Shown here one piece after another: positions 3,023-56,135 of a stretch of 64,000 nt of DNA. Origin of the DNA: Ginglymostoma cirratum (Eukaryota); assembly GCA_024137785.1 (NCBI GenBank), contig JAHRHZ010000155.1, forward strand, positions 832,537 to 896,536, written 5' to 3'. The notes under the pieces are model-generated. The model was not told the origin of the DNA. It made no database searches and saw nothing but the letters and a program-made list of their open reading frames with translations. Both the position numbers and the translations under genes were made by a program. The stretch's first letter is position 1; each line of letters begins with the position of its first letter.

Positions 3023-3304
3023 ACTCACCACGGAATCTCTTGATCACTTCTGTTCATGTGATTGAAGATTCATCAATCAATATAACTGAGGGGAATTCTG
3101 CAAGGATAGTCTGCTCAGTCGAGAGCTTCCCAGCTTCTAACCTGACGTGGAGACATCTTAATGTCACAATGAACAGAACAAGTTCCAACAATGAGCTGTG
3201 TTTGGAGATTCCTCACATTACATACAGGGAGTCAGGAGACTATCAGTGTGTGGCAGAGAATGAACATGGAGCAATGAATGGCTCCATAACCATCACTGTG
3301 AAAT
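3023..3304 (+). CDS. Gene A C2-set Ig exon (282 nt)
   Basis: ttgtag|ACTCACCA..GTGAAAT|gtaagt; IVC..W..GDYQC Ig motif; about 79% aa identity by hand count to gene B exon 31299-31580. Confidence 0.95.
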
Positions 3305-13380: not shown

Positions 13381-14339
13381 ACTAAGCAAGATTGAGAAAC
13401 ACTCAGTGTGGGGACAACACCGATTGACGGAATCTTTCAAACTCAAATTTACCTTCCAAAAATCCACAGGAATCATCCCCAAGAGCTAATTTGAAATTTC
13501 TTGATATCATGTGCTGTAGTTTCTTGAAGGTGAAGTTGTCTCAGAGTTGAGTGATGATGTGTCCAAGATGTTTCTGTCTGGATTTAATTTTAAACATCCT
13601 TCTCCAACAGTGTCTCCAACAGCAAGGGACATTCTTCTCTCCATTGTGATTGTATACATCTTTTGATCTTGATCAAACATCTACCAGGACTCGACACACA
13701 CATTCAATCCCATGCTGGTTCACTCCCTCCCACTCATCCAAACGGGTCAATGTTTTCTGAATACTCCCCTCTCCAGAACTCTCATTTCTCCCTATTTTCT
13801 CTCCTATCGCCTCTCATGCCCTCTGTGAGCTCACCCTGTCTGTGACAGCCATCTCCTTTTCCTATGATCCAGTTCCCACTAAACCGTTGATCATGCAACA
13901 TCCCCTCCTGGCTCTCATGTCAGCCAACAGTGTGATGGTCTCTCTCTTCAGGAACCGGGCCTCTCTCTTTTACGTCTCCCACCTACACACTTCCCTTCCA
14001 AAAATAACCATTCACCTCCTTAAACCTCCCACTTCTCTCTACTGTTTTAAACTGCNNNNNNNNNNTGCAATAAAGGCAGATTTACATTTCTTTAACACCT
14101 TGGACCACTGCAGGACATCCCAAAGTGCTTCAGTGAATGAAATTGTTTTGAAGTACAGCCACCTGTACAATGTAGGATTGACACAGCAAGATCCCACAAA
14201 ATGTCATGTAATTGTGACCCACACAGTTTGGTTTCATTGATGCTGATTGGGAATAAATATTGGCTGCAGCACATTGAGGAGGTGGACCCCGTTCCTTTTC
14301 CAAATACCAGAATGGATTTCTATATCCACCTGAACAGCA

Positions 14340-25521: not shown

Positions 25522-25743
25522 CTAGAACCTGATCTGAGCGTATTCTGTGTCCTTGTCCCTGTGCACAGTCTCATCACCGCTGGGTACCTTAAGAAAGTTG
25601 ATGTTGGCTTGGAGAAGGTCTTTAGTTCTGTCTTGGTGTCCAGCGTCTCTGCCCATTGCACCATCAAAGACATCCTGGGGACCTGACGTCTCTCCCTCTC
25701 TAGTTGTGTCCTGAAGATCAGTAACCACCATGTTCCGTGAACC
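25522..25743 (-). CDS. Gene B terminal exon (ITSM-like TEYAQI)
   Basis: tttccatttctccacag|GGT; GSRNMVV..DLLQANINFLKVPSGDETVHRDKDTEYAQIRF*. Confidence 0.9.
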   Translation of the reverse strand, partial: GSRNMVVTDLQDTTREGETSGPQDVFDGAMGRDAGHQDRTKDLLQANINFLKVPSGDETVHRDKDTEYAQIRF

Positions 25744-34700: not shown

Positions 34701-37700
34701 TGTCTCCAAGTCCACTGTGGCGAAATCATATCTGATGTTATTAAAATCAGCCTTCACCAGGTTCAGAACTTCAATTTCAGGCCCATCCTTGTCCCATTCC
34801 GTAAAAATCTTGAAAATAACAGAGTTATGACCGCTGTCTGCAAAATACTCCCCCACAGATATTTCAACCACTTGCTTCATTACCTAAAATTAAGCCCAGG
34901 ACAGCATCCTGTCTTACGAAGCCTTCTATGTATTGGCTTAAAATGGTCTCCTGAATCTATCCTAAAAATTCTGTTTTCTCTAACTCTTTCACACAACGAC
35001 TACCCCAGTTAATTTTGGAAAGGAAGAAATCTCACTGTCACTATCCTATTCCTTTTACACTCTCTGAAATTTGCCTACATACCTGCTCTTCTATTTCCCG
35101 CTGATTGTCTTGTAGTACACTCTCAACAATGTCATTGTTTCATTTTAAGTTTTACCTCATGGCTTCACTTGAGGAACCCACTAACATGCCATCCCACTTT
35201 ACTGCTGTAATTCATTCCCTTATCAGTATTGTGAGATCTCCTCCACTTTTACCTCCTTCCCAGTAGTTTTACCTGAAGGCCCTGTATCCTGGAATATTGA
35301 GTTGCCAATCCTGTCTCTCTCTCAACATGTCTCATGACAACATACTTCCAAGTTTTAATTTGCGCCCTCACCCGTCTGCATTGCTCATCAGACTCTTTGC
35401 ATGACAGTAAAAACCATCCAACCTTGCCAATCTCCCTTAAACTAGCCAATATTTCCAAATCCTTCCTGACTCACTCACACTCTCTTCTAGTTGATGCTGT
35501 GTATCTCCCCGTGCTAAACCATTCCTCAGGATCCCAGCCTGCTGCCAAGTTAGTATTAACCTTTCCCAACAGCACTGGCAAACCTCCCCGCAAGGAAGCT
35601 TGTCTAACTAATTCCAATTCAGATGCAACCCGTCTGCCTTGTACAGGTCCAAACATCGCCAAAAGGGGTCCCATTGTCCCAGAAATCTAAAGACCTAAAG
35701 ATGATGAGAGAACACACCATCTCTCCAGCCATGCACTTCTCTGGATGAACCTCCTATTTCTATGCTCACTAGCACATGGCAGTGGAAGTAATCCAGAGAT
35801 TAAAACATGTGAAGTCCTTTTATTAGTGTATATCCTAACACCCCAAATTCAGCTTGCAGGATCTCATCCCTCTTTGCCGCTACCAACAGGCACCACAATC
35901 TCTCACTGTTGCCCTCCAATGTAGCTTTTTAAGGCTGTGTACACTCATGTATGAAACCCTCCATTACTCCATGTTCATTCGCTGCCAAGCACTGATAATC
36001 TCCAGTCTCCCTGGATATAATGTGAGGAGTCTGCGACCACAGCTCATTGTTGGAATTAAGCCTGATTTACTCTCTCCCACTCTGTCACACTCTTTCTGTC
36101 TCGCTCTCTGTCTTGCTCTCTCTTTCTCTTTTCCACTCTCATAAACTGTCTAACTGACTCAAACGCAAACTGACTCTGAATCCTTGGACTGAACTCCGTG
36201 ACATATTGAAAACTTGGCAACAAGTTGCAAGCTTGGACCGAGGTAAGTTTGACAGTAGCAACCGATAGAATATCATACTCCCTGAGTTTTACAATATTGT
36301 CAGATTAATGTTATACACAGTACAAATAGATTCAACAAAAAAAATCAAAAAAATAACCAGTTCTCTGTGTAGATGCTACATGTTAAATACGGTGTCTTCT
36401 TAATCTGGAACTTGCATTCCTTTAAGCAGTATGAAAGCTGATTTTGTGTGTGTGCACACCTGCGAGATGTTGACATCTGAATCAACTCACACTGCACAGT
36501 GACAGTTATGGAACTCCCCACTGTTCCATGTTCATTCTCTGCCACACACTGATAGTCTCCAGTCTCCCTGTATGTAACGTGAGGAATCTCCAACCACAGC
36601 TCATTGTTGGAACTTGTTCTGTTCATTGTGACATTAAGATGCCTCCAAGACAGTTTAGAAGCTGGGAGGCTCGCGACAGAGCAGATTATCACTGCAGACT
36701 TCCCCTCAATTATATTGATTGATGAATCTTTAATTCCATCACGGGAAGTAATTGAGAGATTCTGTGGTGGATCTAAAAGCAAATAATGATCAGTTAATTA
36801 CATTGACTGTGAAGCACTTTCCAGACCACGACAATGTGACAGAAGAAAAAGCAATACATTTTCCTTCTCCACGTATCGAGTAACTGAGGCAGATGTTCCA
36901 ATTCTGTACGGAAGGATGGATTCACTCTCAAAGAATCAGTGCTGAGCAAGTGTTGCACTATTGGAGAATCAGTACTGAGACAGCACCGCAATGTCAGACG
37001 GTCTGTGCGGAGGGAGTGCCGCATTGTTGGAGGGTCAATGCTGAATGAGGATAGCTCTTCCAAAAGGTCGGTACTGAGGGAGTGTGGTCCTGTCAACACT
37101 CATTTTTAATGCAAAATGTTCAAACAGCAATGTGATCATTCCATTTTGGTTTTGACCTTTAACCAATATAGCTTCATTTGAAGAGGTTTTCTGACCTCCT
37201 ACATTCATGTCAGAGTCATTTATACATACTTCAATCAGCAAGGACACCAAAAATGATCTCTATGGGACGCCATTGGACTTGGGCTTCCAGTCGCAGAAAT
37301 TCCCTTCAACCATCCACCCTCTGTTTCCTGCCACTTAACCAATTCCTGATCCAATTGTCCAACTTTCTTTCAATCCCATAGGTTCTTTCCTTCACTGTCA
37401 AAGTCTTATTTGGGAGACTATCAGAAGCTTTGCTGAAGTCCTAAGAGACGAAGTCAAATGCATTGCCCTTCATTGTTGAATAATAGTGTCACAATTGGCT
37501 GTTCTCCAATTCACTGGCACCTCTCCTACGGCAACAAAGGAATCAAAACTTTTTGCCTGTGCAAACATTTTCTCAATCCAATCCTGTATATCCCTCAACA
37601 TCCATGGTTCGCGGAATTTGTTGATCCCAGCTTTTATCTTTATTGAAACGTTTGCACTGTCCGCTTTTGATTTCCTTTTGAAATGTGTGCCAATATTTTG

Positions 37701-40700
37701 TCATAGTTTTAAGTAAATCAATGTGCTCCCACTCTACTCTAGCCAAATAAAATCTGAACTTTTTACACTGGATTTTTCCATGTTTAGAACTTTGATTTCA
37801 AGCCCATCCTTCTCCTTTGTCAAAACAATTTTGGATTTTACAGAGTTATTGCCCAGGGGCGGGAGTTATTGCACCGGGGGCAGCATGGTGGCTCAGTGGT
37901 TAGCATTGCAGCCACACAGCGCCAGGGACCCGGGTTCGATTCCAGCCTCAGGCGACTGTCTGTGCAGAGTTTGCACATTCTCCCCGTGTCTGTGTGGGTT
38001 TTCCTCCGGGTGCTCCGATTTCCTCCCACAGTCCAAAGATGTGCAGGTTAGGTGGATTGGCCATGCTAAAGTGCCCGTAGTGTTCAGAGGTGTGTGGATT
38101 ATAAGGGGATGGGTCTGGGTGGGATGCTCCAAGGGTCGGTGTGGACTTGTTGGGCTGAAGGGCGTGTTTCCACGCTGTAGGGATTCTGAGTTATGATTGC
38201 CGTCTGCAAAATGCTCCCCTAATGACATTTCAACCACTTGCCCTGCTTCATTCCCTAAAACTAAGTACAGGTTCACGCCTGTTCTTGCAGGGCCTTCCAT
38301 GTACTGGCTTATAAAGCTCTCCTGGATGCATTGTAAAAATTCTGTTGCTTTAAACGTTTCACACCATGATTACCTTATTTAATGTTGGGAAGGAAGTAAT
38401 CTCCCACTGTCACTATCCTAGTCCTTCTAAACTCTCTGAAAGTTGATTGCATACCTGCATTTTTTTTTTCCTCTTTGGTTGTCTGGGGGCCTGTAGTACA
38501 CTTATAGTAATGTGATTGCACCTTTTTAATTTTTACTTTGAACCGATATGGCTTCAGTTGAGGAGCCTCCTAACATGTTGACCCACCTACTGCTGTAGTT
38601 AATTCCCTGATTAACATTGCCTTTACCTCCTTCCCTTTCTTCACCAGAAGACCTTGTCTCCTGGAATATTGAGCTGCCAATCCTGTCTCCCTCCCAACCA
38701 TGCCTCAGATATGACAATGACATCATACTCCCAGGTTTAATTTGTACTCTCAACTCATTTGCGTTGTTCATCAGGCTTCCTGCATTGAAGCAATACCATT
38801 CAACCTTGCCAATCTACCTTGTGCCTTAACGGAGCAATACTTCCTATGCCTTCCTGACTCAGTTGCTCTCTCTTCTAGTTCTGGTTGTGCTTCTCCCCAT
38901 GCTGAACCTCAGGACTCAGCCAACAACAAAAACAGGAATTGCTGGAAAAGCTCAGCAGGTCTGGCAGCATCTGTGGAGAGAAATCAGAGTTAATGTTTCA
39001 GATTACTCAGAACTTCTGCGGGATCCAGCCCCCTGCCAAGTTAATATTAACCCTACCCAACAGCATTCGCAAACTTCCCCACAAGGATGCTGATACCATT
39101 CCTGTTCCACTGCAACACATCTTTTCCACTGCCGCTAAAAAGTGTCCCAATGCCCCAGAAATCTAAAGTCCTCCTTGTAGCACCATCTCTCCAGCCACAC
39201 ATTAAGCTGGATGACCCGTGTATGTCTGTATTCATGAGAATGTGGCACTGGAAGTAATCAAGAGATTACTATCTGTAAAGTCCTATATTTTACTCTACTT
39301 CCTGGTGCCCCAACTTATGCTTTCAGGACTGCAACCTTATTTTCAATATATGACGTTGGTAACAATATGTACCACAATTTCCAATTGTTTGCCTTCCGCT
39401 GTAGATGTTGAAGGCTGTCTACACTCACATTGCACAGTGATGGTAATGAAGCCCTCCTCTGTTGCATATTCATTCTCTGCCACACACTGATAGTCTCCAG
39501 TCTCCCTGGATGTAATGTGAGGAATCTCCAACCACAGCTCGTTGTTGGAACTTGTCCTGTTCATTGTGACATTAAGATGTCTCCACATCAGGTTTGAAGC
39601 TGGGAAACTCTCAACAGAGCAGATTATCACTGCAGAATTCCCCTCAATTATATTGATTGATGAATCTTGAATTATATGAGGAGAAGTAATTGAGAGATTC
39701 TGTGGTGTATCTGAAAACAAAGGAAGAGAATATTGTGACAGAACAGTAAACAGCAGGATACTATGCAGATATTTCTGTGTTTAATGCCCCTGAATTTCAT
39801 TCACTTCCCCGCTATGAAAGTTTTTATGTTATATTTATAATGGACATTGCCCATAAATTATCATTATATTCTCTCACCACCAGAGCAGCTGTCCATCAGG
39901 AAAGAAAAAAGTTATTTTCATGTCCTCAGGATGAGCCCAGGTTCTTGTCAGCTATTGGATAATATTTATTCATTGCATTACTGAGTGATATGATATAACT
40001 GCAGACCACATCAGGGCAAAATCTGTCTGCTGCCCAGTACGTTCATTTTAGTAAGTAGACAACATCTGATTTGTCAGATACTTAGTAAGAGAATAAATCC
40101 ATGAGATGCAATAGTTTTGAATAAACAGAAATAAGATTTCTGATGCAAAGGTACAGTCTCCAATGTATGTACCACATATATTCTAACATCCAGAATTAAA
40201 CTGAGGTCAATATGGGTAACAGACAAACTGAGATTAAAGACACTCCAGAGCACGTTAAATGAAAAATGAGGTGAAGACAGATCTTTGAGCGTACCCCAGA
40301 TATTAATGACGGTGTAGTTCATCATATTCTCAATGTTAAGTTCCCAGGTCTAACTGAATGGGATGATCAAACAGCGGCTGGGATGACTTCATGTGCTGCT
40401 ACCACACAGAACGAGTGACCTTCAGTTAGCTTTTCAGCAGCTGTGTGAGCAAACCTCAGCCTTCACGGAGCCTGTCCTGTTTTTTAATCTGTCTCACTCC
40501 TAGGTTCTATGTTTCTCGTTCTCTTTGTCTCTCTCTTTCTTCTCCTCATGCTGTAACTATCTAACTGACTCAAACACAAGCTAACCGAACCCTTGGATTA
40601 ATCTGAGTGATCTATTGAAAATTTGGCAACGAGCAGCATGTTTGTACAAATGTATGGTTGACAGTATTAATGGAATGCAGTGTTCTCTGAATGTTACAAT

Positions 40701-43700
40701 ATTCTCAGATTGCTGTTGTACACAGCAAATGGATTCAACTGAAAAAAAATACTGAGAACGGATAAATCTACCATTCTCTGTGCGCTGCTTGTTAAATAGT
40801 TTCTAGGTACTCCGGAGGTTATATTGCTCCAACATGGAGTGAGAGCTGGTAATGGATGAACATGTATATGTGTGTGTACATCTGAGAGATGTTGAAGTCT
40901 GTGTGCACTCACATTCCAAAGTGATGGTTATAGAGCCCTCCACTGCTCCATGTGCATTCTCTGCCACACACTGATAGTCTCCAGTCTCACTGTATGTAAC
41001 GTGAGGAATCTCCAACCAAAGCTCGTTGTTGGAACTTGTTTCGTTCATTGTGGCATTAAGATATCTCCACATCAGGTTAGAAGCTGGGAAGCTCTCAACA
41101 GAGCAGATTATCACTGCAGAATTCCCCTCATTTATATTGATTGATGAATCTTTAATTATATGAGGAGAAGTAATTGAGAGATTCCGTGGTGCATCTGAAA
41201 GCAAAGGAAGAGAATATTGTGACAGAACAGTGCACAGCAAGATGCTGGTTTTTCTGTATTTGGTGGTTCTGAATTTTCATTCACTTTCCTGCTATGTAAG
41301 TTTCTATGTGATACTTCTAATGGATATTGCATATGTAAGCTGTCATTATATTCTCTCACCACCAGAGCTGCTATCCATCGGGAAAGAAAAAAAGTTATTT
41401 TCATGTCCTCAATATGACTCCAGGTTCTTGTCAGCTATTGGATAATATTTATTCATTGCATTACTGAGTGATATGGTATGACTCCAGACCAGATCAGGCC
41501 AAAATCTGTCTGCTGGCCAGTATGTTCATTTTAGCAAGTAGACAGCATTTGATTTGTCAGATACTTAGTAAGAGAATAAATCCATCAGATGCAATAGTTT
41601 TGAATAAACAGAAATAAGATTTCTGATGCAAAAGTACCGTCTCCAATGTATGTGCCACATATATTCTAACATCCAGAATTAAACTGAGGTCAATATGGGT
41701 AACAGATAAACTGTGATTGAAGACACTCCAGAGCACATTAAATGAAAAATGAGGTGAAGACAGATCCCTCAAATCTTTGAGCAGTACCCCAGATATTAAT
41801 GACGCTGTGGTTCATCATATCTCAGTGTTAAATATGGAAGTGGAATTTCTTTCTGACATACTAGTGGCTTTATTCTGAAACCTAAGTGAATCCCAGGCTT
41901 TTTTCTGAATCCTTATTTCAACATTTAGCAACTGGCTCCCTGGACTACTCTTGGGTCCTAACATAGCTGCAACAACAAGTTCCCAGGTCTAACGGAATGG
42001 GATGATCAAATGGCGGCTGGTACCTCTTCATGTGCTGTTACCAAATACAACAAGTGACCTTCAGTTAGCTTTTCAGCATCTGTGTGAGCAAACCTGAGCC
42101 TACACAGAGCTTGTCGACCCAATTTAGCCACAACCTCTGGCTGTTCTCACTCACCCAGAAGGATTATCCTATGAAATCCCTGACCCTGGCTGCAGAGAGC
42201 AACACGCTATCTTAGAGTGACATTGTCAAAAATCATACGATATCAGGTTATAGTCCAACAGGTTTATTTGAAAACACAAGCTTTCGGAGTCTCTGTCCTT
42301 CCTCCATCATCAGACACAAAATTTATATGCAAAAAATGAAAGCATCATTGAATTGATATGAATGTATTGAACAAACCTAAGATGGCTGTTAAATCTTTAA
42401 TCGGTTAGAAAGAAGATGCAGGTTTCTATTGATAAATATGCAAATCCAAGAATTTCTTTCAAGTCACTGCCCTGAGATAACTAAAGGTTTTATCAGTATA
42501 CCAGAGAAGACATCTCAGGTCACGCAATGCATGTTAGATGTGAGGCCTTGTTTAGAATCTGTCTGTGTTTTAGCTTGGAGTCAGAGCTGACAGCTGCAGA
42601 AATATCTATCTGTTCCTAAACTAAAAAAATCCCCACTCGGTACTGCACTTCCACTCTTCCCTCACCTCTCCTGTATAGCTGGGCCACCCATAGTATCTCG
42701 GCCTTGTGTGCTGCTGCGCTTCTCCAGAGATCCATCACCAACACCCAGACAGAAAACCAGCTGCTGTGTGGGACCAGGGAGAACTCCTGCACTACCTGCC
42801 TGTTTCTCTTGGACTGCCAGGTATTCACACATTCCCTATCTGCCTGCTTCCCCCTGACATGTGGTATAATTATGTGAAGGGTTCAGACCCCAAACGTCAA
42901 CTTTCTTACTCCTCTGATACTGCCTGGCCTTGTGTGTTCCTCCACCTCCACACTGACTGTCTTGTTGGGACTGTTTCAGGGGACTGTTAAGAATCAACCA
43001 TGTTGCTGTGGGACTAGAGTAACAAGAAGGACTGTCCCAATAAGAACAGCAGATTTCCTTCTGTAAAGGTCATTAGTCATCCTGAGGGCTTTGTACAAAA
43101 ATTGACAGTGGTTGCATGGCCACTAGATTTTTATTCCACATTTTTGCCATCTGCCACAGGGTTGAACCTGTGTCTCCCAAAGCGTGAGCCAGGATGTCTG
43201 GATTATTAGACCAGTGATATTACTTGTACACCACCATCTCTCCTGCTTCAGTAAGGAGACCACAACTGCACACAGTGGCCCAGATATGTTCAGGGCCCTA
43301 AACAGTTGTAGAAAAACACCTCCCAAACTTTTATTCCCGAATCACATTGCAAAAACTACCGACATCCTACTTGTATTCCAAAGCACCTGCTGCACCTGCT
43401 ACGGATATCTATTTGTAATACACGTACCAGGAATCATTTGAGAGAGCATTAGAAGTTCTGAATGACACAATATTAAATTACAGGGTGTTTAGAGCATTCT
43501 AAAGGTCTGAAAAGATGTGAAATTGCTCACATTCTACGGGAGTTTGGACAGGGAGAAACTGAGATGCCCAAGCTGTTTGTTACTACACAGTAGTAGGAGA
43601 TTTCCACCTCAAATTCATAAATAACAGTAATGGTTTGACCAGATAACATCAGATCAATGACTTTTGGTCTCATTCTGACAGATGTATTGCGGAGAGCATC

Positions 43701-46700
43701 TTTCAAATGGAAAACTATCAACGCATTAAACACTGAGATAAAGGAAAGAGTGTTGATGGAATATTCCCCACTTGACTGTATGAGTGCGGCTCCAACAACA
43801 CTCAAGCAGCTCAACACAATCCAGGACAAAGCACCCTACTTGATTGACACAACATCCACAAATATCCAATAACTCCATAACTGATGCTCAGTAGTAGCAG
43901 TGTGTACCATCGACAAGATGCACTTCAGAACTTCACCAAGGCTACTGAATCAGCACTTCCCAAACCCACAAGCATTTCCATCTAGAAGTACAAGGGCAGC
44001 AGGTATGTGGAAACACTGTCCCATGGAACCCCACCTCTCGCAAGTTGCCCTCCAAGTCACACACTATCCCAACTTGGAAATATATCACCATCCCTTCAGT
44101 ATTGCCTGTTTCAAAATCCTAGGACTGCCTCCCTTAATTGTGGTACGTACAGCACATGGACTGCAGTAATTCAAGAAGACAGCTCAACACCACCTTCTCA
44201 AGGGGTAATTGAGGACAGGCAGTAAATGCTGGTCCAGCCAGTGACATCCACATTATGTGAATGACTACACATAGGAGTGATGTTTAATCACAGGATTTGG
44301 ATAGGAATTTAACTTGAATACAGGTCCAAGTTTAGTATTCAATAAACTGCGCTGGTCCCTGTATTGCAGATGCTTTAACACAGCATTACAATAAGATTAC
44401 AATGGAGGAATGTATCTCTGCTCTGTGCCAGTGTTTCAGAAGTTCAAAACCTTCTCTCACCCCTCCTAATGTTCCTCCCATCATTATTTCCATCCATTCC
44501 TTTATCCCACATATCCAGCCACCACCACCTGCTTCAATATATTGACACGATTCACCTTGACCACTTACATTCTATCCTCCCTACTTTCTGTGGAAGTGAG
44601 GCCCACATTCCTGCCACTGTCTGTGAGAATGAGTCCCATATTCTCCTTGCTACTCCTTGTGAGAATGAGTCCCACATTCTCTTAACCACTCCCCATGGGA
44701 GTGAGAGCTCTATTTCTCCCACTCATGTGGATATAAGTCCCACATCCTCCCCAAAAACTCCCAGTGGGTGTGTGTCCAACATACCACTCCCCATTCCCGT
44801 GGGAGTAAGTCCCACATTCCCCACCCACTCCCTGTCAGATAAGTGTTACATACACTCCCTGTGGATGCATGTCCCACATTCCACCCCGCTCCCTGTGGAA
44901 GTGTGTCCTATATCCTCTTCCAGTGTCTGAGAGGAGGTGGGGGAGGATTTTCTCTTGAATTCCCCACAAGAACTGTTTTCTATTGATGGCCCTTTACTTA
45001 TCTCCTCACTCCTGGACAAGTTATGTCTCCTCGATCAAAACCCCTTTCAGAATTTTACAAACCTTGGTAAGGTCACCCTTCAGCCTCTCTGTCCTGAAGT
45101 AACATCACTGGACCAAAAAAAAAAGCTCTGTTTCTCTCTCCACAGATACTACCAGACCTGCTGGGTTTCTCCAGCATTCTGTGTTTCCATTTCACCCTCA
45201 GTCTTTTCTGGGGAAAGAAGTTCCAGCCTGTTTATTTTAGTTTTGGCAGATAGTTATAACCTCTCAGTTCTGGGATCATCCTTTGTCAATACTAATTGAA
45301 CCCAGTTCAAAGTGTCATTTCATATAAGACTGCATGCTGTTCAATTTTAATGTTTTTGATGATGGAATCATCACTGAATGAGCCCAGTAATATATTCCGT
45401 TCTCTTGCTGATCCTTGGGAATGTGAAGAGGAGTCACTTTCTGGAATACAACTGAGTGTCTCACTGCATCTGTTTTAGAGTCAACCACATTGCTATGGAT
45501 CAGAGGCACATGCAGGCCAGGCTGGGTAAGGACAGCATTTACTTCCCTAAAGGGCATTAATGAACCCGATGGGTTTTACAACAATCGACAATAGTTGCAT
45601 GATCGCTAGCTTTTGATTCTATATTCTTATGGAATTCAAATGTCACCTTCTGTCATGGTGGGTTTGAACCTGTCCCCCACAGAGCATGAGCCAAGGGTCT
45701 GGATTATTATAACAGTGACATTTCCAGTACGCCACCAACTCTCCTACTTCAGTAAGGAGACCAAAACTACTCACAGTGCTCCGCAATTGTGTTCAGGGCA
45801 CTACACAGCAGTAAAAAAAAAAACTCCTGACCTTTTATACATGATTCACATTGCAACAGCCATCAACATCCCACTTGTATTCCAAAGCACTTGCTGCACC
45901 TGCACGCAGTCTTTTAGGATTCATTTGAGAAAACATATGAATGACAGAATAAGAAAATACAGACATGTGGATCATACTGAAGCTTCAAGAAGATGTGAAA
46001 TTGTTTTAAAACTAGGATTAAAAGTACTCACATTCTATGGAAACTTGGACAGGGAAAGACTGTGAGCTGCCCAGGCTGTTTGTTGCTACACAGTAGTCGG
46101 AAATATCCACCTCAAGTCCATAAGGAACAGGTTTGGTTTGACCAGATAATGTCAGATCAGTGACCTTCCCTTGGGAGATCTTAAACCAGCTGAATCTGTG
46201 GACTGCTGGATTCCCATCACTGGAACAACTTAGAGAAACGGTCTTTCCTTTTCCTGTTGTCATTCTGACAGACGTATTGCAGGGAGAATCTTGCAAATGC
46301 AAAATTATTAATTCATTAAACACTGAGCTAAAGGAAGGAGTGTGATGGAATACTCCCCACTTGCATGGATAGGTGTACTTCCAACAATACTCAAAAAGCT
46401 CAACACTATTCAGGACAAAGCAGCCTGCTCAATTGGCACCACATCCAAAGACATCTACCCTGTCCACCATCGACCGTCTGTAGCAGCAAGTATTTACTAT
46501 CTACAAGATGTACTGCAGAACTTGGAACCATAGAATTCCTATGCTGTGGAAACAGCCTATTTGGTCCATCGATCCCACACCAACCCTCCGAAGAGCATCC
46601 CACCCAGACTCATTCCTGCTCTGTAAACCTGCATTTCCAATGGTTAATCCACATGGCCTGCACATCCCTGGACAATTTGGGCGATTTATCATGGCCAATG

Positions 46701-49700
46701 CACTTAACCTGCAAGTCTTTGGACTAGGTCAAAAGTCACACGACATCAGGTTATGGTCCAACAGGTTTGTTTGAAATCACAAACTTTTGTAGCACTGCTG
46801 CTTCATTAGGTGAAGTGAAGAAAAGTGCACAGGCATAGAATTTATAGGCAGAGAGATCAGTGGGTGGAGAGATCAAAAGATCATACTAAATGGTGTGAGT
46901 GGAGTGTCGAATAATAATAAGTCTCTGCAGGTGATCAAAAGTGTCAGACAGTGTGAGTCAAGTATCAACAGCTGAATCATAAGTGAAGGGGATGATCTAC
47001 CTCATACACTGCAGGCAAGGTATATTGGTGAGACTTTGCAGATGCTACGGCAATGGATGAATGGATACAGTGCAACAATTGCCAGAGAGAAATGTTCCCT
47101 CCCAGTTTAGCAGTCTAGGAGATACACAACAATGTAGAATTGCTGAGCAGAAACTGATAGCCACATTCTGTATCCATGTTGATGGCCTCAACCATGATCT
47201 CAGGTTCATGTTATGCTACATATAACCCCACTATACTGATCTATATTTGTAAAACCTTCCTTTTTGTCTTGTTTTGACAGCATCACCTTGATAACTTATT
47301 ATGATCTCCCTACCTTAATTAGTTTGTATGGTTTTGGATTACTTATTACTTTAGTTAGACCGTCGGCATGTGACTCTTATACCTATCATGTTATTCCAGC
47401 CATTTGGTTTGTCTCCAGCACCACTTTATTTTTAATTTTTTTTGTAAATATCTCTCTGCCTCAATTAATTGGACTTTTGATCATCCCCTTCACTTACTAT
47501 TCAGCAGTTGACACTTTCCTCACATTGTCTGACACTTTTGATCACCTGCAGAGATTTATTATTGGACACTCCACTCACACCATCTGTATGATCTTTTGAT
47601 CTGTCTGCATATTGATCTCTCTGCCTATAAATTCTGTGCCTATGTGCTTTTCTTCACTTCACCTGCTGAAGGGGCAACACTCAGAAAGCTTGTGATTTCA
47701 AATAAACCTGCTTGTTTATAACCTGGCGTGGTGTGACTTCTGACCTTGTCCACCCCTGTCCAACACAGTGCGAACCACGGGTCACCGTGTCACTCAAGGC
47801 TTCTTAGGCAGAACCTTCCAAAATCTCAACCGTTCCACCTGGAAGGACAAGGGCAACAGATACATGGGAACAGCATCACCTACATGTTCTCCAAGTTACT
47901 CGCCATTCTGTCTTGGCAATATATTACCATTCCTTCAGGGGCGCTGGTGTCAAAATCCTGGAATTCCCTCCCTAAGGGCTTTGTGGGTCCATCTCCAGCG
48001 TGAGGACTGCAGCGGTTCAAGATGGTGGCTCAGCGCCACCTTCTGAAGGGGCAATTAGGGACAGGGAATAAATGCTGGTCCAGCCAGCGACATGCATATT
48101 CAGTAAATGACTATACGTAAGTGTGATATTTAACAGCCGGATTTGGATAGGAATTGAATATACTCACAAGTTGTAGACACTCCATGTTTAACCTGTGCTG
48201 GTTCCTGACTCCCAAATTACTTTACACAGAATTACAACGAGACTACACCACAGGAGCGCCCCCTCTACTCTGTACCAGTGTTCCTGTTTCACACCAGCTC
48301 CTCGTATCTCTCGCCACCTCGTGTGCTTCTCCAGCTTCCCCTACTGCAACATATCAACACGATTGACTTTGACCATTTCCTGTGGGAGCAAGTCCCACAT
48401 TCCCCCCACTCCTTGTGCAGTGAGTCCCACATTCTCAAGCCACTATCTAGGGGGAAGATGTTTCTCCTGAATTACCCCATTGGATTTATTTGGGACTGTC
48501 TGCTATCGATGGCCCTTGTTCTGGTCTCCCCCTCTCCCCACAAGTGAAAACATCTTGTCTATGTCTCCTCGAACAAAATCCTTTTCAGAATTTTAAAGGT
48601 CATCCCCTCAGCTTCTGCTTTTCAAGAAAAAAGAGCCTCAGACTGTTCAGTCTCTCCCAACGGCTGTAACCTCTCACTTCTGGGGTCATCCTTTGTAAAT
48701 CCTTTTCCAATACCTGATTCAATGCAAGATCGACACCATCTCAGTCACAGGCAGCAATAACTTACACTTCACACTCAAGGTGACCGAGTTGAACACTCGG
48801 TGGTTGGTTTGAGGGTAGTCACAAGTACAGCGGACAGTTTGATGGTGATGTATGTGTGAAGGGTTAAAGGTCAGCACTGTAAAAACCTCGCCCTCGCTCT
48901 CTGTGGTGTCACTGACTGAGGAAGACGGCAGCTCGCTCCAGGTCAGTTTGGGAGGGTTATCAGGGCAGGTGTGGAGAGCTTTACAGATGATATAAGCTGA
49001 CGTCCCTTCCCGTAAATCCCTCGGAAGTAACAACTCGGGACGGTCAGGAATATCTGTAAAATGAAAATAGCCAGATGTTAACATTCATTGTACGTGTATT
49101 TGGGTTGATTCTATAGTTTTGCATTGGAACCTGGACTCTTAAAAACTCAAGGGCAGTCAGCCCATCCAATCCATGCCGGCTCAAGCAATCCTGATCACTT
49201 CCCATCATTCTGTGAATTTATTTCCCTCAATTGTCTATCCAGTTTCCCTTTGGAATCATTGATCAAAACATCTTCTACCCCACCTTGCAGACAGCGAGTT
49301 CCAGATCACAACTGCTCTTAGAAACATAGAAAACAGGAGCAGTTTTGGGCCATTCAGCCCTTCAAACCTGCCCCATAATTCAGTATGATCATGGCTGATC
49401 ATGCAGTGATGTGGCAGAAGTGGGAACCAGTATAATAGGCACTTATTAGACTCATCTACCAACTTGTCAATAACGCAGCACTCCCTCAGCACTGACCCTC
49501 CAACAGTACAGTACTTCCTGAGTACTGATCCTCTGATAGTGTGGCACTATCTCAGCACTGACTCTCTGACAGTGCGGCACTCCCTCATCACTGCCCCCCC
49601 CTCCCCCCCAACAGTGTGGCACTCCCTCAGTACTGACCCTCCAACAGTGCAGCACTCTGGGATCACACCCATTTGAAGTTGATGTTCATGTTGATACCTC

Positions 49701-52700
49701 CTGCAGTAAGACCTGAACTCACAACTTTCAGCCTGAGAGGTATGGCCCGTATCCCCTTGGACTGATGGACTGTCAGATGTTCTGGGACTTACCTAGAACC
49801 TTTAGATGGGCTGGTTCTTTGAAGGTGTGAACTTCGAATCCTTCCACATCCACATACAAATAATAGTTGTCACTGTCTTCAGGCCTGAGGTTGTTAATTT
49901 TCAAGGAGCAGTCCTTCTGCTCCAAGTCTCCAATTATATCTGTACGTCCAACAAAGGTGGACATCCCATAATTGGGGTCTTTGCTGTAGACGACGGCGTA
50001 TTTCCAGTAATACCAGTATTTAAACCAAGCTCCCTGCACGGCCTTGTAAGGGTGCGACGGAAAGTCAAAGGTACAGGGTATAACCACACATGAACCACTG
50101 ATAGCCTTCCGAGCTGCAGTTGTCATTGTCCATTCTTCTGTCGCCACGCCTGAGTGAGAGACAAGGAGGTACCGGACATTACGGAACTAATTATGATTGT
50201 ATTTGGAAACAGAATACAGGGCAGTCTGGTTGACTGCTTACATGGATAACAGCACATAGTGCGAGTGAACATCTGAATCTGGAGCAGTAGTAGGCCATTC
50301 AGCCCCTTGATCCTGTTCCGCCATTCAATAAGGTCATGTCTGATCTGTTTGTGTTTAGAATTCTACATTCCCATCTCTCCCCAATATCCGTTGATTTCTT
50401 GGCCAATCAAAAATCTATCCCCCTCCCCGGCTTTAAAAATATTCACTGTTCCCATTTTCACTGCCTTATGAGGCAGAGTCCCAAAGTCACACACGCTCTG
50501 TTTTCAAAAGGTGACCTGTAATTTTAACATAGAGTCAGCTGGTTTTGGACTTGCCCACAAGACGATATGTCATTGCCTCTTCCATTTTAAGAAGACCCTT
50601 CAGAGTTTTGTAAAGTGACAATCTTTTGAGCTACTTTTTTCAGATTTAATTGGCTAAATTAAAGCAGATGAAAGTTTGTCAACCCTGCAAGAGACACTTA
50701 AAAAAAAATTCAAAACTGAAATGAATAAAATGCAATGCAGTATTGTTTCTTTTGAGATGAAGAAGGCACTCCTACCCCAGCAGTGACCACCATGCACTGA
50801 CAGTGTGCAGTAAGGCTGTGGACCCTGTCTTTACATACATGATGAGAAGGCAAACATAATATTGTATTTTGTTGAGTAATTGATGGAGGATAATCATCTT
50901 GTGACAGTTGTGCAGGGTACTGGTTGCTGCACACCTCAATTACTTGTTTGGTCCTGTTATTTAAGGACAGATATCTTCAAACCAATCTGCTCGGGCATGC
51001 TATGATCCACCACTGGAGCAGGTTCACTGGGACATGAACCTGTGCATCCTGGCTCAGAGGTGGGGACACTACCACTGTGTCACAAGAGCCAACTGATGCT
51101 TATGACAGGCACTGAGACATGGTTGAGCAGGTTGGAAGGGTCAGTGCTGAGGGAGCACCGCTCTGTCAGAGGGTCAGTGCTGAGGGAGCACCGCTCTGTC
51201 AGAGGGTCAGTGCTGAGGCAGCGCCGCTCTGTTGGAGGGTCAGTGCTGAGGGAGCACCGCTCTTTCGGAGGATCATTGCTGAGGGAGTGGGCACTGACTG
51301 AGAGTCAGTTCTGAGGGAGCGCTGCACTGTCAGAGGGTCAGTGCTGAGGTACTGGGCAATGTCGGAGGGTCAGTCCTCAGGGAGCGCCGCACTGTCGGAC
51401 AGTCAGTGCTGCGGTAGCACTGCTCCGTCGTAGGGTCAGTGCTGAGGGAGTGGGCACTGTCGGAGAGTCAGTTCTGAGGGACCGCCGCACTGTTGCAGGG
51501 TCAGTGCTGATGGAGTGCCGCTCTGTTGGAGGGCTAGTGCAGAGGCAGCGACACTCTGTCGGAGGGTCAGTGCTGAGGGAGCGCCACTCTTTCGAATAGT
51601 CAGTGCTGAGGGATCGCCGCACTGTCAGAATGTCAGTGCTGAGGCAGCGCCGTTCTGTTGGAGGGTCAGTGTTGAGGGAGTGCCACTCTGTCGGAGGGTC
51701 AGTGCTGAGGGAGTGCCACTCTGTCAGAGGGTCAGTGCTGAGGGAGCGCCGCACAGTTGCAGGGTCAGTTGTTGGAGCTCCGCACTGTCGGACAGTCAGT
51801 GCTGAGGGAGTGCCGCTCTGTTGGAGGGTCAGTGCTGAGGAAGTGAAGCACAGTTGGTGGGTCAGTACTGAGTGAGCACTGCACCGTCAGAGGGTTATTG
51901 ATAAGAGACTGCAGCGCTATTGAACGGTCAGTGCTGAGTGAGCGCCACACTGTCAGAGAGTCAGTACTGACGGACTGTCGTACTTTCGGAGGGTCAGTAC
52001 CGAGGGACTGCCGCACTGTTGGAGGGTCCTTGACAAGGGAGTGCTACACTCTCAAAGGGTAAGTACGAAGGAATACTGGAATGTCGAAATGTCAGCACTG
52101 AGGGAGTACCACACTGTCAGAGGGTCTTTGCTGACAGAGTGCCATACTGTCCGTGGGTCACTACTGAGAGAGTGCTGTATTGTTGGCGGGTCAGTACTGA
52201 GGGAGTGCTGCATCATCAGAGGATCAGGACGAAGGGAGTGCTGCACTGTCGGAGGGTCCAATGCTGAGCGAGTGCCACTCTGTCGGAGGGTCAGTAGTGA
52301 GGGAGTGCTGCACTGTCAGAGGTCAATACTGAGGGACTGCCACACTGTCGCAATGCTGCGTTCTCAGAGGGTAAGTACTGAGGGAGTGCTGCAATGTTGG
52401 AGGGTCAGTACTGAAGGCAGTGCTGCATTGTTGGAGGGTCATTACTGAAGGCAGTGCTGCACTGTTGGAGGGTCGTTACTGAAGTAGTGCTGCACTGTTG
52501 GAGGGTCAGTACTGAGAGAGTGCTGCCCTACTGGTAGGTCAATGCTGAGGGAGGGATGCATTGTCAGAGCATCAGTACTGAGGGAGTTGCCCATTGTCAG
52601 AGGGTCAGCGCTGACGAAGTGCTGCACTGTTGGAGGGTCAGTACTGACAGTGTGCTATTCTACCAATTGGTCAGTACTAAGGAAGGGCTGCACTGTTAGA

Positions 52701-55700: not shown

Positions 55701-56135
55701 GCTATCAGAGTCCTGGTGTCAAGATCTACATCACCATCCAGTTTTTATCCAGACTTCTGAAATGTCCCTGTCATCCCACACTCACTGACCTACCTTAGTA
55801 CCATGTCTGTCAACACCTTGGTTTTATGATTCTCCAAAACCCTCCACGCTCCCTCTCTCTACCTATGTAATCTCCACCAACTTTTGAACCCTCCAAGATC
55901 TCTTTGCTCCTCCAGTGCTGTTATCAGACTGGGAGCCAGTATATGTCAGTGAGCACAGGGTTGTTGGGTGAACTGGACATGGTACGAGTTTGTACTCTGG
56001 CTCACTGCTGAATTAGTTCCTAATCATAGCTCAATAAAAATGATCTTTTGAAAAACTATTAACCATAAATCTGTCCGAGCTGACAATGACATTACCTTGA
56101 AGAAGTAATAGCAGGAAGTAAGATTTCTCAATCAT
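25522..56135 (-). CDS. Gene B: complete Siglec/CD22-like receptor, 915 aa (SP + V + 7 C2 + TM + ITIM/ITSM tail); complement(join(25522-25743,27181-27262,27562-27658,30100-30375,31299-31580,36491-36772,39429-39710,40913-41194,46032-46289,48766-49053,49793-50149,56096-56135))
   Basis: 12 exons, all GT-AG; phase-1 introns between Ig exons; total 2748 nt = 916 codons with no internal stop; Siglec cysteine pattern in domains 1-2. Confidence 0.9.
27001..27110 (-). pseudogene. Relic copy of the 3' half of gene B terminal exon
   Basis: Translates DVLYTNNNFSKPPSSNGTVHRDKD versus the live DLLQANINFLKVPSGDETVHRDKD; then frameshifts. Confidence 0.8.
27181..27262 (-). CDS. Gene B cytoplasmic exon 1 (ITIM LTYSQV)
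   Basis: gttattgcag|G..CAG|gtacag; RKTATEETASKTNEIGLTYSQVSVKHQ. Confidence 0.9.
27562..27658 (-). CDS. Gene B transmembrane exon
   Basis: tttttatag|..|gtaagt; WIDSNKWKVGLVMAGIMLNVFLAGILIFLCVRK. Confidence 0.92.
30100..30375 (-). CDS. Gene B Ig domain 8 (C2-set)
   Basis: YSPRETTV..VTLTCSS..YTWFR..DDAGFYCTATNPLG; ttccag| and |gtaagc. Confidence 0.93.
31299..31580 (-). CDS. Gene B Ig domain 7 (C2-set, 282-nt repeat exon)
   Basis: tttttag| and |gtgaga; IIC..W..GDYQC. Confidence 0.93.
31755..32220 (+). repeat. Degenerate 33-bp minisatellite array
   Basis: CAGTACTGA..GTGCAGCACT-type units. Confidence 0.75.
32431..32634. mobile_element. Penelope-derived fold-back mini-element with 15-bp TSD
   Basis: Inverted arms; TTGATCAAAAACAAG at 32416-32430 and 32635-32649; hammerhead core 32545-32572 (+). 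Confidence 0.9.
33913..34157. mobile_element. Second-family Penelope-derived fold-back mini-element with 11-bp TSD
   Basis: Inverted arms meet at ~34050; TCTACTTTCAA at 33902-33912 and 34158-34168; hammerhead-like cores ~34021-34047 (-) and ~34058-34090 (+). Confidence 0.85.
35950..36055 (-). pseudogene. Truncated pseudo-exon of the 282-nt C2 repeat
   Basis: SNNELWSQTPHIISRETGDYQCLAANEHGVMEGFI; 5' half and acceptor deleted, donor region altered. Confidence 0.85.
36491..36772 (-). CDS. Gene B Ig domain 6 (C2-set, 282-nt repeat exon)
   Basis: cttttag| and |gtgagt; intact frame. Confidence 0.93.
37873..38187 (+). mobile_element. HE1-type SINE inserted into a CR1 remnant, TSD GAGTTAT
   Basis: Full head, core and tail; GAGTTAT at 37863-37869 and 38188-38194. 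Confidence 0.92.
39429..39710 (-). CDS. Gene B Ig domain 5 (C2-set, 282-nt repeat exon)
   Basis: ttttcag| and |gtgagt; intact frame. Confidence 0.93.
40913..41194 (-). CDS. Gene B Ig domain 4 (C2-set, 282-nt repeat exon)
   Basis: ctttcag| and |gtgagt; intact frame. Confidence 0.93.
43531..43699 (-). pseudogene. Pseudo-exon duplicate of gene B domain 3
   Basis: Splice sites kept, but an internal deletion removes the B/C strands (first Cys and Trp) and there is a 2-nt deletion near the end; 169 nt is not a multiple of 3. Confidence 0.88.
44560..44930. repeat. ~36-38-bp degenerate minisatellite
   Basis: GAGTCCCACATTCTCC..ACTCCCTGTG units. Confidence 0.8.
46032..46289 (-). CDS. Gene B Ig domain 3 (C2-set)
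   Basis: tttgcaag| and |gtgagt; VSLSCSSDGNPAVHRFSWFK..DYCVATNSLG. Confidence 0.88.
46725..47765. mobile_element. Penelope-like remnant with large inverted arms (~46725-46980 vs ~47500-47750)
   Basis: GGTCAAAAGTCACACGACATCAGGTTAT..TTTGAAATCACAA and its reverse complement at ~47690-47745; internal GIY-YIG-like remnant (YIGETLQML). Confidence 0.7.
48766..49053 (-). CDS. Gene B Ig domain 2 (Siglec-type C2-set)
   Basis: ttttacag| and |gtaagt; IICKALHTCPDNPPKLTW..VLTFNPS..HHQTVRC is a typical Siglec domain 2. Confidence 0.95.
49470..49660 (-). repeat. 33-bp minisatellite array
   Basis: Same unit family as 51135-53330. Confidence 0.85.
49793..50149 (-). CDS. Gene B Ig domain 1 (Siglec-type V-set)
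   Basis: ctcactcag| and |gtaagt; GSCVVIPCTF..W..GRT..GD..KDCSLKI..L..EDSDNYYLYV. Confidence 0.96.
51135..53330 (+). repeat. Long 33-bp minisatellite array (~2.2 kb, about 65 units)
   Basis: Unit GAGGGTCAGT(G/A)CTGAGGGAGTGC(C/T)GCACTGTC(A/G); 11-aa periodic ORFs (GSVLRECxTVx). Confidence 0.95.
53660..53840 (+). mobile_element. Penelope 3' terminus fragment
   Basis: Reverse complement of ~23734-23915; degenerate hammerhead core at ~53758-53784. Confidence 0.8.
56096..56135 (-). CDS. Gene B signal-peptide exon (coding part; exon acceptor at 56163)
   Basis: ACAATGA Kozak context; MIEKSYFLLLLLQ(G)|gtaatg is phase 1 and joins VATEEW. Confidence 0.85.

What the first reader, a model, noticed from the sequence alone, without database searches (positions are those of the whole stretch)
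49793..50149. Siglec-fold V domain lacking the sialic-acid Arg, with a Trp/Tyr-packed loop
Seen: the domain has the Siglec hallmarks (N-terminal Trp, GSCVVIPC, KDCSL, partner Cys in domain 2 HTCP). The F-strand reads DSDNYYLYV, where Siglecs read D-x-x-x-Y-F-F-R-V, so TAT (Tyr, 49854-49856) occupies the Arg position. The C-C' region is WFKYWYYWKY (49998-50027), 8 aromatics in 10 residues. Established: this Arg forms the salt bridge to sialic acid in CD22, MAG, sialoadhesin and CD33-related Siglecs, and the C-C' loop tunes specificity. Inference: the receptor is intact but repurposed for a non-sialylated ligand such as a protein, lipid or neutral glycan bound by aromatic stacking.
Basis: partly seen in the sequence, partly recalled or inferred. 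Interest (0 to 1): 0.82.

Follow-up and report, generated by a model that had tools for sequence, protein, structure and literature searches.

The report
Arginine-less shark Siglec lectin domain
This exon encodes the outermost domain of an intact shark immune receptor of the Siglec family whose sugar-clamping arginine is a tyrosine; the same change, beside an unusually aromatic loop, is kept in every relative found in 13 shark and ray species, so it is an old, maintained variant and not a broken gene.

Summary
Window 49793-50149 (minus strand) is a phase-1 exon encoding a Siglec V-set domain. Its best solved relatives are MAG (E 7e-15) and sialoadhesin (3e-14). The AlphaFold model superposes on sialoadhesin at TM 0.87-0.89. 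Tyr (TAT, 49854-49856) aligns without gaps to the essential Arg of MAG, sialoadhesin and Siglec-5. WFKYWYYWKY (49998-50027) has 8 aromatic residues of 10. The maximum is 6 and the median about 2 in 267 other Siglec-like V stretches.

All 32 V-bearing relatives checked, from 13 elasmobranch species (sharks, a sawshark, a sawfish, skates), carry Tyr at that site, and 31 carry W[FY]KYW..WKY. They form one clade separate from MAG and from Arg-bearing shark Siglecs.

The gene is intact: 13 exons with canonical splice sites, about 1013 codons, an ITIM-like and an ITSM-like motif. It is colinear with RefSeq models of whale shark and zebra shark.

Loss of the canonical sialic-acid salt bridge follows. 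A switch to a non-sialylated ligand remains inference: two invariant lysines flank the loop, and a similar aromatic loop occurs in an Arg-bearing shark Siglec.

I rate it a new variant of a known kind.

The parts
56096..56135 (-). Signal-peptide exon (MIEKSYFLLLLLQ plus 1 base), donor GTAATG
   Evidence: Scan for ATG, a hydrophobic core and a phase-1 donor. It matches the N-termini of P0189 (MIGKSYFLLLLLQG), P0188 and P0003.
49793..50149 (-). V-set (Siglec lectin-type) exon, 357 nt, phase 1/1: the finding
49854..49856 (-). TAT = Tyr98, at the position of the essential sialic-acid-binding Arg
   Evidence: Ungapped alignments to MAG, sialoadhesin and Siglec-5 and alignment A1. Tyr in 32 of 32 clade members.
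49998..50027 (-). WFKYWYYWKY: end of strand C, C-C' loop, start of strand C'. Invariant frame W-x-K-Y-W-x-x-W-K-Y with two variable tip residues (46-47)
48766..49053 (-). Ig domain 2 exon (C2-set) with the extra Cys in HTCP
   Evidence: It is 93-96% identical to P0189/P0188. Contigs of run X1 lie on it.
46032..46289 (-). Ig domain 3 exon
43538..43732 (-). Degenerate copy of the domain-3 exon with an interior deletion (no B-strand Cys). Probable pseudo-exon, absent from P0189.
40913..41194 (-). 282-nt C2 exon, repeat 1
39429..39710 (-). 282-nt C2 exon, repeat 2
36491..36772 (-). 282-nt C2 exon, repeat 3 (no best match in whale-shark model P0189)
31299..31580 (-). 282-nt C2 exon, repeat 4
30100..30375 (-). 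C2 exon
29158..29451 (-). Membrane-proximal Ig-like exon
27562..27658 (-). Transmembrane exon (..WKVGLVMAGIMLNVFLAGILIFLCVR..), donor GTAAGT at 27561
   Evidence: One search printed one base too many; it is corrected here from the sequence.
27181..27262 (-). Cytoplasmic exon 1 with LTYSQV (fits the ITIM consensus)
   Evidence: Matches P0189/P0188.
25522..25743 (-). Last exon: ..LLQANINF.. (the family's ITIM site, with Gln for Tyr) and TEYAQI (ITSM-like), then stop TAG

Best explanation
The exon is the ligand-binding V domain of an intact, inhibitory-type Siglec-family receptor of an orectolobiform shark. It belongs to an old, elasmobranch-wide Siglec subfamily in which the F-strand Arg that clamps the sialic-acid carboxylate has been Tyr since before sharks and rays split. 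The subfamily also keeps a rigid aromatic/lysine frame (W-x-K-Y-W-x-x-W-K-Y) around a two-residue variable tip of the C-C' loop.

Shown: the fold, the substitution, its conservation, the clade, and gene intactness.

Follows from established Siglec biochemistry: the canonical Arg-carboxylate salt bridge cannot form.

Inferred: the conserved aromatic surface on the G-F-C-C' face (Phe42, Tyr44, Trp45, Trp48, Tyr50, Tyr96, Tyr98, with Lys43 and Lys49) is the working binding surface. Its ligand is held mainly by stacking and hydrophobic contacts, and the variable tip residues 46-47 tune specificity. Engagement would signal through LTYSQV and TEYAQI in the tail.
For: - Siglec fold and register.
- Tyr at the Arg site in 32 of 32 V-bearing relatives from 13 species of 6 orders, and the loop frame in 31 of 32.
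- With the trait columns removed, these V domains form one group (SH-aLRT 93). Its inner topology follows the species tree, and it is separate from the MAG clade (99) and from the Arg-bearing elasmobranch Siglecs.
- In the 11 distinct sequences compared, 13 of the 18 positions of the loop (41-50) and of the F-strand segment (91-98) are invariant, against 31 of 100 elsewhere (Fisher p = 0.0013).
- Positions 46-47 vary (YY, YS, NH, NY, YR, YH, HY, YK).
- Gene intactness.
- Colinear RefSeq models P0189 (Rhincodon) and P0188 (Stegostoma).
- Contigs of same-species run X1 stop at 49793 and 49055 with 13 and 5 unplaced letters, as a spliced V-d2 joint would give.
- The literature calls the Arg essential and reports that natural Arg mutants do not bind sialic acid (PMC6288428; PMC13358205).
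Against: - No binding data exist.
- Invariant Lys43 and Lys49 could supply a substitute positive charge.
- Trp6 and Trp45, the counterparts of sialoadhesin Trp2 and Tyr44 by my count of the printed chain, are kept. Much of the sialic-acid pocket is therefore still there.
- A like aromatic loop coexists with the canonical Arg in P0015.
- Loop pLDDT is only about 74.
- The library type of run X1 is not on record. Its contigs also lie on introns, and the unplaced letters were not shown, so the transcript evidence is indirect.
- No dN/dS could be computed because no orthologue DNA was available.
Confidence: 0.55

Rival explanations
1. The domain still binds sialic acid or another anionic glycan (sulfated or phosphorylated), but non-canonically. 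An invariant lysine (Lys43 or Lys49) next to the aromatic loop replaces the Arg as the cationic contact.
For: Lys43 and Lys49 are invariant across the clade. The pocket aromatics Trp6 and Trp45 are retained. Siglec-6 recognises glycolipids independently of its canonical pocket (PMC10122656, abstract). Some bacterial Siglec-like domains bind sialic acid without the Arg (PMC13358205).
Against: By strand alternation, Lys43 lies on the same side of strand C as the core Trp41, so it may not face the pocket. This is inference only. In natural primate Arg mutants, sialic-acid recognition is lost (PMC6288428). The G-strand aromatic counterpart (MAG Tyr127 and sialoadhesin Trp106 by my count) is His in most members.
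Confidence: 0.2
2. The aromatic G-F-C-C' face is a protein-protein interface: a V-V homodimer, a cis partner, or a protein ligand contact like the interface of antibody V domains. It is not a glycan or lipid site.
For: The invariant exposed aromatics sit on strands C, C' and F, the face that V domains use to pair (the face assignment is inference from Ig V-set geometry). Non-sialylated protein ligands of Siglecs are known, such as Hsp70 and bacterial proteins for Siglec-5/-14 (PMC13358205).
Against: No multimer model or binding data exist. Solved Siglec V domains matched as monomeric lectin domains. The variable loop tip fits ligand tuning better than a fixed dimer contact.
Confidence: 0.17
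3. It is a decaying or 'retired' lectin domain (as proposed for human Siglec-XII), kept only as a spacer on a signalling receptor or skipped by splicing.
For: Loss of the essential Arg is the classic sign of retirement in primates (PMC6288428). A V-less isoform is predicted in Stegostoma (P0201).
Against: The open frame, the Tyr and the aromatic frame are kept in 13 species spanning the shark-ray split. Invariant positions are concentrated at the former binding face. The listed differences from a related species are 3 replacements and 3 silent changes, with none in the Tyr codon or the loop, although that table was truncated.
Confidence: 0.04

Closest known systems
Myelin-associated glycoprotein (Siglec-4) V domain, PDB 5lfr/5lf5
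   Same: It is the best sequence match among solved structures (E 7e-15). The alignment is ungapped from strand B to strand G, and the F-G region is shared (..GGYNQYTF.. versus ..EGFEVHTF..). TM is 0.87. Several clade members are auto-named 'MAG-like'.
   Different: The counterpart of MAG Arg118 is Tyr here, and that of MAG Tyr127 is His. The C-C' loop is two residues shorter and more aromatic. The V domain falls outside the well-supported MAG clade. The gene has more Ig domains and an ITIM/ITSM-type tail, so it is not a MAG orthologue.
Sialoadhesin (Siglec-1) V domain, PDB 1qfo/1url
   Same: It is the best structural match (TM 0.87-0.89, rmsd 1.6 A). The counterparts of sialoadhesin Trp2 and Tyr44 are Trp6 and Trp45 here (alignment, my count). 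Both have a long stalk of C2 domains.
   Different: Arg97 is replaced by Tyr. Whether sialoadhesin lacks a signalling tail is from my own knowledge and was not tested here.
Naturally Arg-mutated primate Siglecs (human Siglec-XII R122C; great-ape Siglec-5)
   Same: These are Siglecs that are signalling-competent but lack the essential Arg (PMC6288428).
   Different: The primate cases are recent, lineage-specific changes, partly on the way to pseudogenes. The change here is fixed across sharks, a sawshark, a sawfish and skates, and comes with a conserved accompanying motif.
Arg-bearing elasmobranch Siglecs (e.g. P0015 Cetorhinus 'Siglec-12', P0018 Mustelus 'Siglec-13', P0007 Scyliorhinus 'Siglec-8')
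   Same: They share the membrane-proximal C2 domains, the transmembrane segment and the tail (..LLYANINF..TEYAQ[IL]RF). P0015 even shares an aromatic C-C' motif.
   Different: Their V domains read YFFRIEF with the canonical Arg and are only 30-36% identical to this one. In the window gene the corresponding ITIM Tyr is Gln, and an ITIM-like LTYSQV lies one exon upstream.
Siglec-6 non-canonical glycolipid recognition
   Same: It is a precedent for a Siglec V domain using a site other than the Arg pocket (PMC10122656, abstract).
   Different: The paper describes binding independent of a canonical pocket that Siglec-6 still has. No sequence relation beyond the family was tested here.

Membership tests
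Siglec family (I-type lectins) | N-terminal V-set Ig domain with the Siglec fold | tested here: met
   Pfam V-set and Ig_CD22. The top PDB sequence hits are all Siglecs. The model matches sialoadhesin and MAG at TM 0.87-0.89.
Siglec family (I-type lectins) | Cysteine pattern: B-E intrasheet pair plus an extra V-domain Cys paired with an extra Cys in domain 2 | tested here: met
   Met at sequence level only. Cys20, Cys25 and Cys80 are invariant in the clade. HTCP-type Cys is present in domain 2 of the window and its orthologues. Disulfide connectivity itself was not tested.
Siglec family (I-type lectins) | Essential F-strand Arg that salt-bridges the sialic-acid carboxylate | tested here: not met
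   Tyr98 occupies the site in ungapped alignments. This holds in all 32 clade members.
Siglec family (I-type lectins) | Aromatic residues of the pocket (A-strand Trp; G-strand Trp/Tyr) | tested here: inconclusive
   The A-strand Trp6 is kept. The G-strand position is His in most members and Tyr in skates and in P0188. His also occurs at that position in 17 Arg-bearing relatives.
Siglec family (I-type lectins) | Binds sialylated glycans | not testable with these tools
   This needs glycan-array or cell binding with and without sialidase.
Siglec family (I-type lectins) | V domain followed by C2-set domains, one transmembrane segment, and a tail with ITIM/ITIM-like motifs | tested here: met
   Nine C2-type exons, a transmembrane exon, LTYSQV and TEYAQI.
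MAG (Siglec-4) orthologue | V domain groups with vertebrate MAG and keeps Arg118 | tested here: not met
   The MAG clade (13 rows, SH-aLRT 99) excludes the window V domain, and Arg is replaced by Tyr.
Elasmobranch Tyr-type Siglec clade (defined here) | DSDxYY[FL]Y[VL] in the F strand, W[FY]KYW..WKY in C-C', and more than 60% V-domain identity | tested here: met
   The window V domain is 62-84% identical to members in the searches. It is about 95% identical to P0189 and P0188 by my count of substitutions. It lies in one group in the tree.

The most novel reading that the evidence does not exclude
Cartilaginous fishes have kept, since before sharks and rays diverged, a separate lineage of Siglec-fold receptors. 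This lineage gave up the sialic-acid salt bridge and recognises a non-sialylated ligand (protein, lipid or neutral glycan) through an invariant Trp/Tyr/Lys platform with a variable two-residue tip. That would make it an ancient non-lectin (or differently specific) branch of the Siglec family, with both inhibitory-tail and YxN-tail members as a possible paired system.
Probability: 0.35. Interest if true: 0.72.

Novelty: new variant of a known kind. Interest (0 to 1): 0.55.

Why it matters
Current reviews call the F-strand arginine essential and present in virtually all Siglecs (PMC13358205). Natural losses are treated as recent 'retirements' on the way to gene loss (PMC6288428). Here the loss is old, fixed and accompanied by a strongly conserved new surface, which points to a working receptor with a different mode of recognition.

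Fish Siglec surveys in the held library cover teleosts only and list four Siglecs (PMC7226832). I found no paper describing this elasmobranch clade. Its members exist only as automatic RefSeq names: MAG-like, sialoadhesin-like, CD22-like, Siglec-10 and Siglec-13.

The hypothesis is simple to test with a V-C2-Fc fusion, sialidase treatment and a Tyr-to-Arg revertant.

Tried and rejected
1. The word-index protein search with the 118-aa exon product found nothing. This is an effect of the length filter, not absence of relatives: the full HMMER search found 796 relatives.
I had no orthologue DNA and so could not compute dN/dS. I used protein-level invariance instead.
3. Only strand-alternation reasoning is offered.
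4. Other signal-peptide candidates (57416, 59559, 50298) were rejected in favour of 56135-56096, which matches the orthologue N-termini.
5. I first read the tail as 'ITIM lost' (note 3). I corrected this after finding LTYSQV in the cytoplasmic exon 27262-27181.
6. I first took P0001/P0002 (YxN tails) for the orthologues. P0189 and P0188 are colinear with the window gene and are the better orthologues.
7. Run X1 cannot be called RNA. Its type is not on record and its contigs also lie on introns.
8. Spliced model: exons were searched one by one by reference.
9. The N runs at 370-469 and 14056-14065 were left alone.
Full report
**What is in the sequence**

On the minus strand, window 50149-49793 is an exon flanked by a pyrimidine-rich acceptor (..CTCTCACTCAG|) and a GTAAGT donor, phase 1 at both ends. 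It encodes 118 full codons beginning VATEEW. These contain GSCVVIPC, KDCSL and DSDNYYLYV. TAT at 49854-49856 is Tyr98, and WFKYWYYWKY is 49998-50027.

**Is it a Siglec V domain, and is the register right?**

- Pfam gives V-set (1.2e-9) and the CD22-type first Ig domain (1.7e-7).
- Against all PDB chains the best hits are MAG (7e-15), sialoadhesin (3e-14), then Siglec-5, CD33, Siglec-8, -7, -10 and -15.
- In the alignments shown for MAG, sialoadhesin and Siglec-5, the segment D-S-D-N-Y-Y-L-Y-V lies without gaps on D/E-x-G-x-Y-x-F-R-x. Tyr98 therefore sits on the essential Arg: MAG R118 and sialoadhesin R97, numbered by my count of the printed chains.
- A 30-row MAFFT alignment with vertebrate MAGs and other relatives agrees (A1).
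- An AlphaFold2 model built on A1 has mean pLDDT 83.3 and pTM 0.78. Its strands are A 7-10, A' 13-15, B 21-28, C 36-43, C' 50-54, D 69-72, E 79-84, F 93-102 and G 113-117.
- Foldseek puts it on sialoadhesin (TM 0.87-0.89, rmsd 1.6 A over 116-118 columns) and MAG (0.87), followed by other Siglecs and PILR.
- The loop proper is YWYYWK (44-49), with pLDDT about 74.

**Is the aromatic loop unusual?**

Across 267 other Siglec-like V stretches from the homologue set, the same segment holds at most 6 aromatics (three cases) and typically 1-3. The window has 8 and its clade 6-8.

**Relatives**

The word-index search with the exon alone was blank because of its length filter. I therefore ran the full HMMER search, which gave 796 hits at E <= 1e-3. 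A second word search used the V-d2 part of the best hit.

The nearest proteins are all RefSeq or UniRef predictions from elasmobranchs (names):

| Order | Species |
|---|---|
| Orectolobiformes | Stegostoma tigrinum, Rhincodon typus, Chiloscyllium punctatum, C. plagiosum, Hemiscyllium ocellatum |
| Lamniformes | Carcharodon carcharias, Cetorhinus maximus |
| Carcharhiniformes | Scyliorhinus canicula |
| Pristiophoriformes | Pristiophorus japonicus |
| Rhinopristiformes | Pristis pectinata |
| Rajiformes | Amblyraja radiata, Leucoraja erinacea, Rhinoraja longicauda |

They are auto-named MAG-like, sialoadhesin-like, CD22-like, Siglec-10 or Siglec-13.

- All 32 V-bearing sequences checked have Tyr at the Arg site (DSDxYYFY[VL]). 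Thirty-one have W[FY]KYW..WKY.
- The window is the only one with Leu instead of Phe before the Tyr.
- No holocephalan or bony-vertebrate member appeared. After these, identity drops to 42% or less.
- Among 297 V stretches of the first 168 proteins, the site is R in 159, W in 33, Y in 28 and K in 15.

**Tree**

A maximum-likelihood tree used 171 V stretches, with the loop and the Arg-site columns removed. It puts the window with the Tyr-type sequences in one group (SH-aLRT 93, stem 0.27). Inside that group, orectolobiforms, then catshark plus basking shark, then sawfish plus skates follow the species tree.

The group is separate from the MAG clade (99), from the Arg-bearing elasmobranch Siglecs (97) and from a Trp-for-Arg clade of turtle and teleost 'CD22-like' proteins. 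Its deeper position is unresolved: there are only 100 columns and many open forks.

One origin before the shark-ray split is the simplest reading. My own knowledge puts that split at roughly 250-300 million years ago.

**Constraint**

In the 11 distinct clade sequences, 44 of 118 positions are invariant. These include Trp6, Cys20, Cys25, Cys80, Ala40, Trp41, Lys43, Tyr44, Trp45, Trp48, Lys49, Tyr50, Tyr54, Asp91-Ser92-Asp93, Tyr95, Tyr96 and Tyr98.

The loop (41-50) and the F-strand segment (91-98) hold 13 invariant positions of 18, against 31 of 100 elsewhere (Fisher p = 0.0013).

The two tip residues 46-47 vary (YY, YS, NH, NY, YR, YH, HY, YK).

Contigs of a related species (organism B) give three replacements (S17N, G61K, L97F) and three silent changes in the exon. 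None of the listed changes is in the Tyr codon or the loop, but that table was truncated.

**Gene**

Only their lengths and phases were summed.

| Exon | Coordinates (minus strand) |
|---|---|
| Signal peptide | 56135-56096 |
| V | 50149-49793 |
| d2 | 49053-48766 |
| d3 | 46289-46032 |
| 282-nt C2, four copies | 41194-40913, 39710-39429, 36772-36491, 31580-31299 |
| C2 | 30375-30100 |
| Membrane-proximal Ig | 29451-29158 |
| Transmembrane | 27658-27562 |
| Cytoplasmic 1 | 27262-27181 |
| Last exon | 25743-25522, ending in TAG |

- All exons have AG/GT and compatible phases. They sum to 3042 nt, or 1013 codons plus the stop, if all four repeats are used.
- A damaged copy of the d3 exon at about 43732-43538 is probably skipped.
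- The whale-shark model P0189 (898 aa, flagged low quality) and the zebra-shark model P0188 (743 aa) are colinear with these exons. By my count of substitutions, they are about 95% identical to the window in the V domain. Per-exon tblastn identities are 81-97% for P0189.
- These two, not the YxN-tailed P0001/P0002, are the likely orthologues.
- The tail carries LTYSQV (fits the ITIM consensus) and TEYAQI (ITSM-like).
- The site that reads LLY[AI]N[IV]NF in Arg-bearing shark Siglecs reads LLQANINF here and in P0188.

**Transcript evidence**

The single read-laying run shows that runs X1 and X13 are of the window's species, with zero differences.

- One X1 contig lies on 49793-49948 with 13 unplaced letters before 49793.
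- Another lies on 48724-49055 with 5 unplaced letters after 49055.
- The d2 exon starts at 49053, and the two bases upstream happen to equal the last two bases of the V exon. That is what a spliced V-d2 joint would look like.

The evidence is indirect. The letters were not shown, the library type is not on record, and other X1 contigs lie on introns. The same contig also runs 42 nt past the d2 donor.

**Meaning**

Shown: a Siglec-fold V domain without the essential Arg, in an intact gene, belonging to an old and conserved elasmobranch clade.

Established (PMC13358205; PMC6288428): the Arg salt bridge is required for canonical sialic-acid binding, and natural Arg mutants do not bind.

Inferred: the invariant aromatic/lysine surface on the G-F-C-C' face is the working site for a different ligand.

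Open points:
- Lys43 and Lys49 could rescue anion binding.
- The aromatic face could be a protein interface.
- A similar loop (WYRYWETWSW) occurs with the canonical Arg in P0015, so loop and Arg loss are separable.

**Literature**

Searches of the held library found no description of Siglecs of cartilaginous fishes beyond a passing mention in the whale-shark genome paper (PMC8455134). The fish survey PMC7226832 covers teleosts only. Absence from this library does not prove the clade is unpublished.

**Earlier notes of this scan**

The scan's earlier notes on this window (paired receptors, accordion stalk, YxN tail of gene A) agree with what I saw. None of them describes the Tyr clade.

Noticed in passing
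window 25522-25743 and 27181-27262 (minus strand): The tail is homologous to that of Arg-bearing shark Siglecs (P0015, P0018: ..LLY[AI]N[IV]NF..TEYAQ[IL]RF). The ITIM tyrosine of that motif is Gln (CAA) here and in zebra-shark P0188, while an ITIM-consensus LTYSQV sits in the preceding exon where P0015 reads LTPSPL. The inhibitory motif appears to have moved.
   Followed up: partly
window 3025-13377 (+ strand) versus the minus-strand gene: Gene A on the other strand has a 282-type C2 exon (3025-3303), a transmembrane exon (9996-10082) and YxN-rich tail exons (12800-12910, 13270-13377). These match the Tyr-clade protein P0001 of Stegostoma. Its V exon is not in the window. Tyr-type heads thus occur with two tail types (ITIM/ITSM and YxN), a possible paired system.
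   Followed up: partly
P0201 (Stegostoma tigrinum, isoform X3): A predicted isoform joins the signal peptide directly to domain 2 and skips the V exon.
   Followed up: no
window 43538-43732 (minus strand): A degenerate duplicate of the domain-3 exon with an interior deletion that removes the B-strand Cys. It is absent from the whale-shark model and is probably a pseudo-exon.
   Followed up: partly
window 48724-48765 (minus strand, intron after d2): An X1 contig continues 42 nt past the d2 donor. Read-through would end the frame after ..SVKCKLLLPVTEMVSILH. This could be unspliced RNA, DNA, or a short secreted V-d2 form.
   Followed up: no
P0008, P0010, P0011, P0016 and others (turtle Pelodiscus, teleosts Megalops, Hoplias): A separate clade of Siglec-like 'CD22-like' V domains carries Trp at the Arg position (..YPWVDP..), often in tandem V repeats. 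Arg-less Siglec-fold domains seem common outside mammals.
   Followed up: partly
window 49470-49700 and 51080-53280: Dense interspersed repeats with very high contig depth in all four runs. In translation they give repeated ..SAEGVPLCQRV../..SLSTDPPTV.. strings on both strands. They look like SINE-type elements in intron 1 and in the V-d2 intron.
   Followed up: no
window 49857-49859 (minus strand): The window reads Leu97 (TTG) where all 32 relatives and organism B read Phe (TTT) just before the Tyr.
   Followed up: yes
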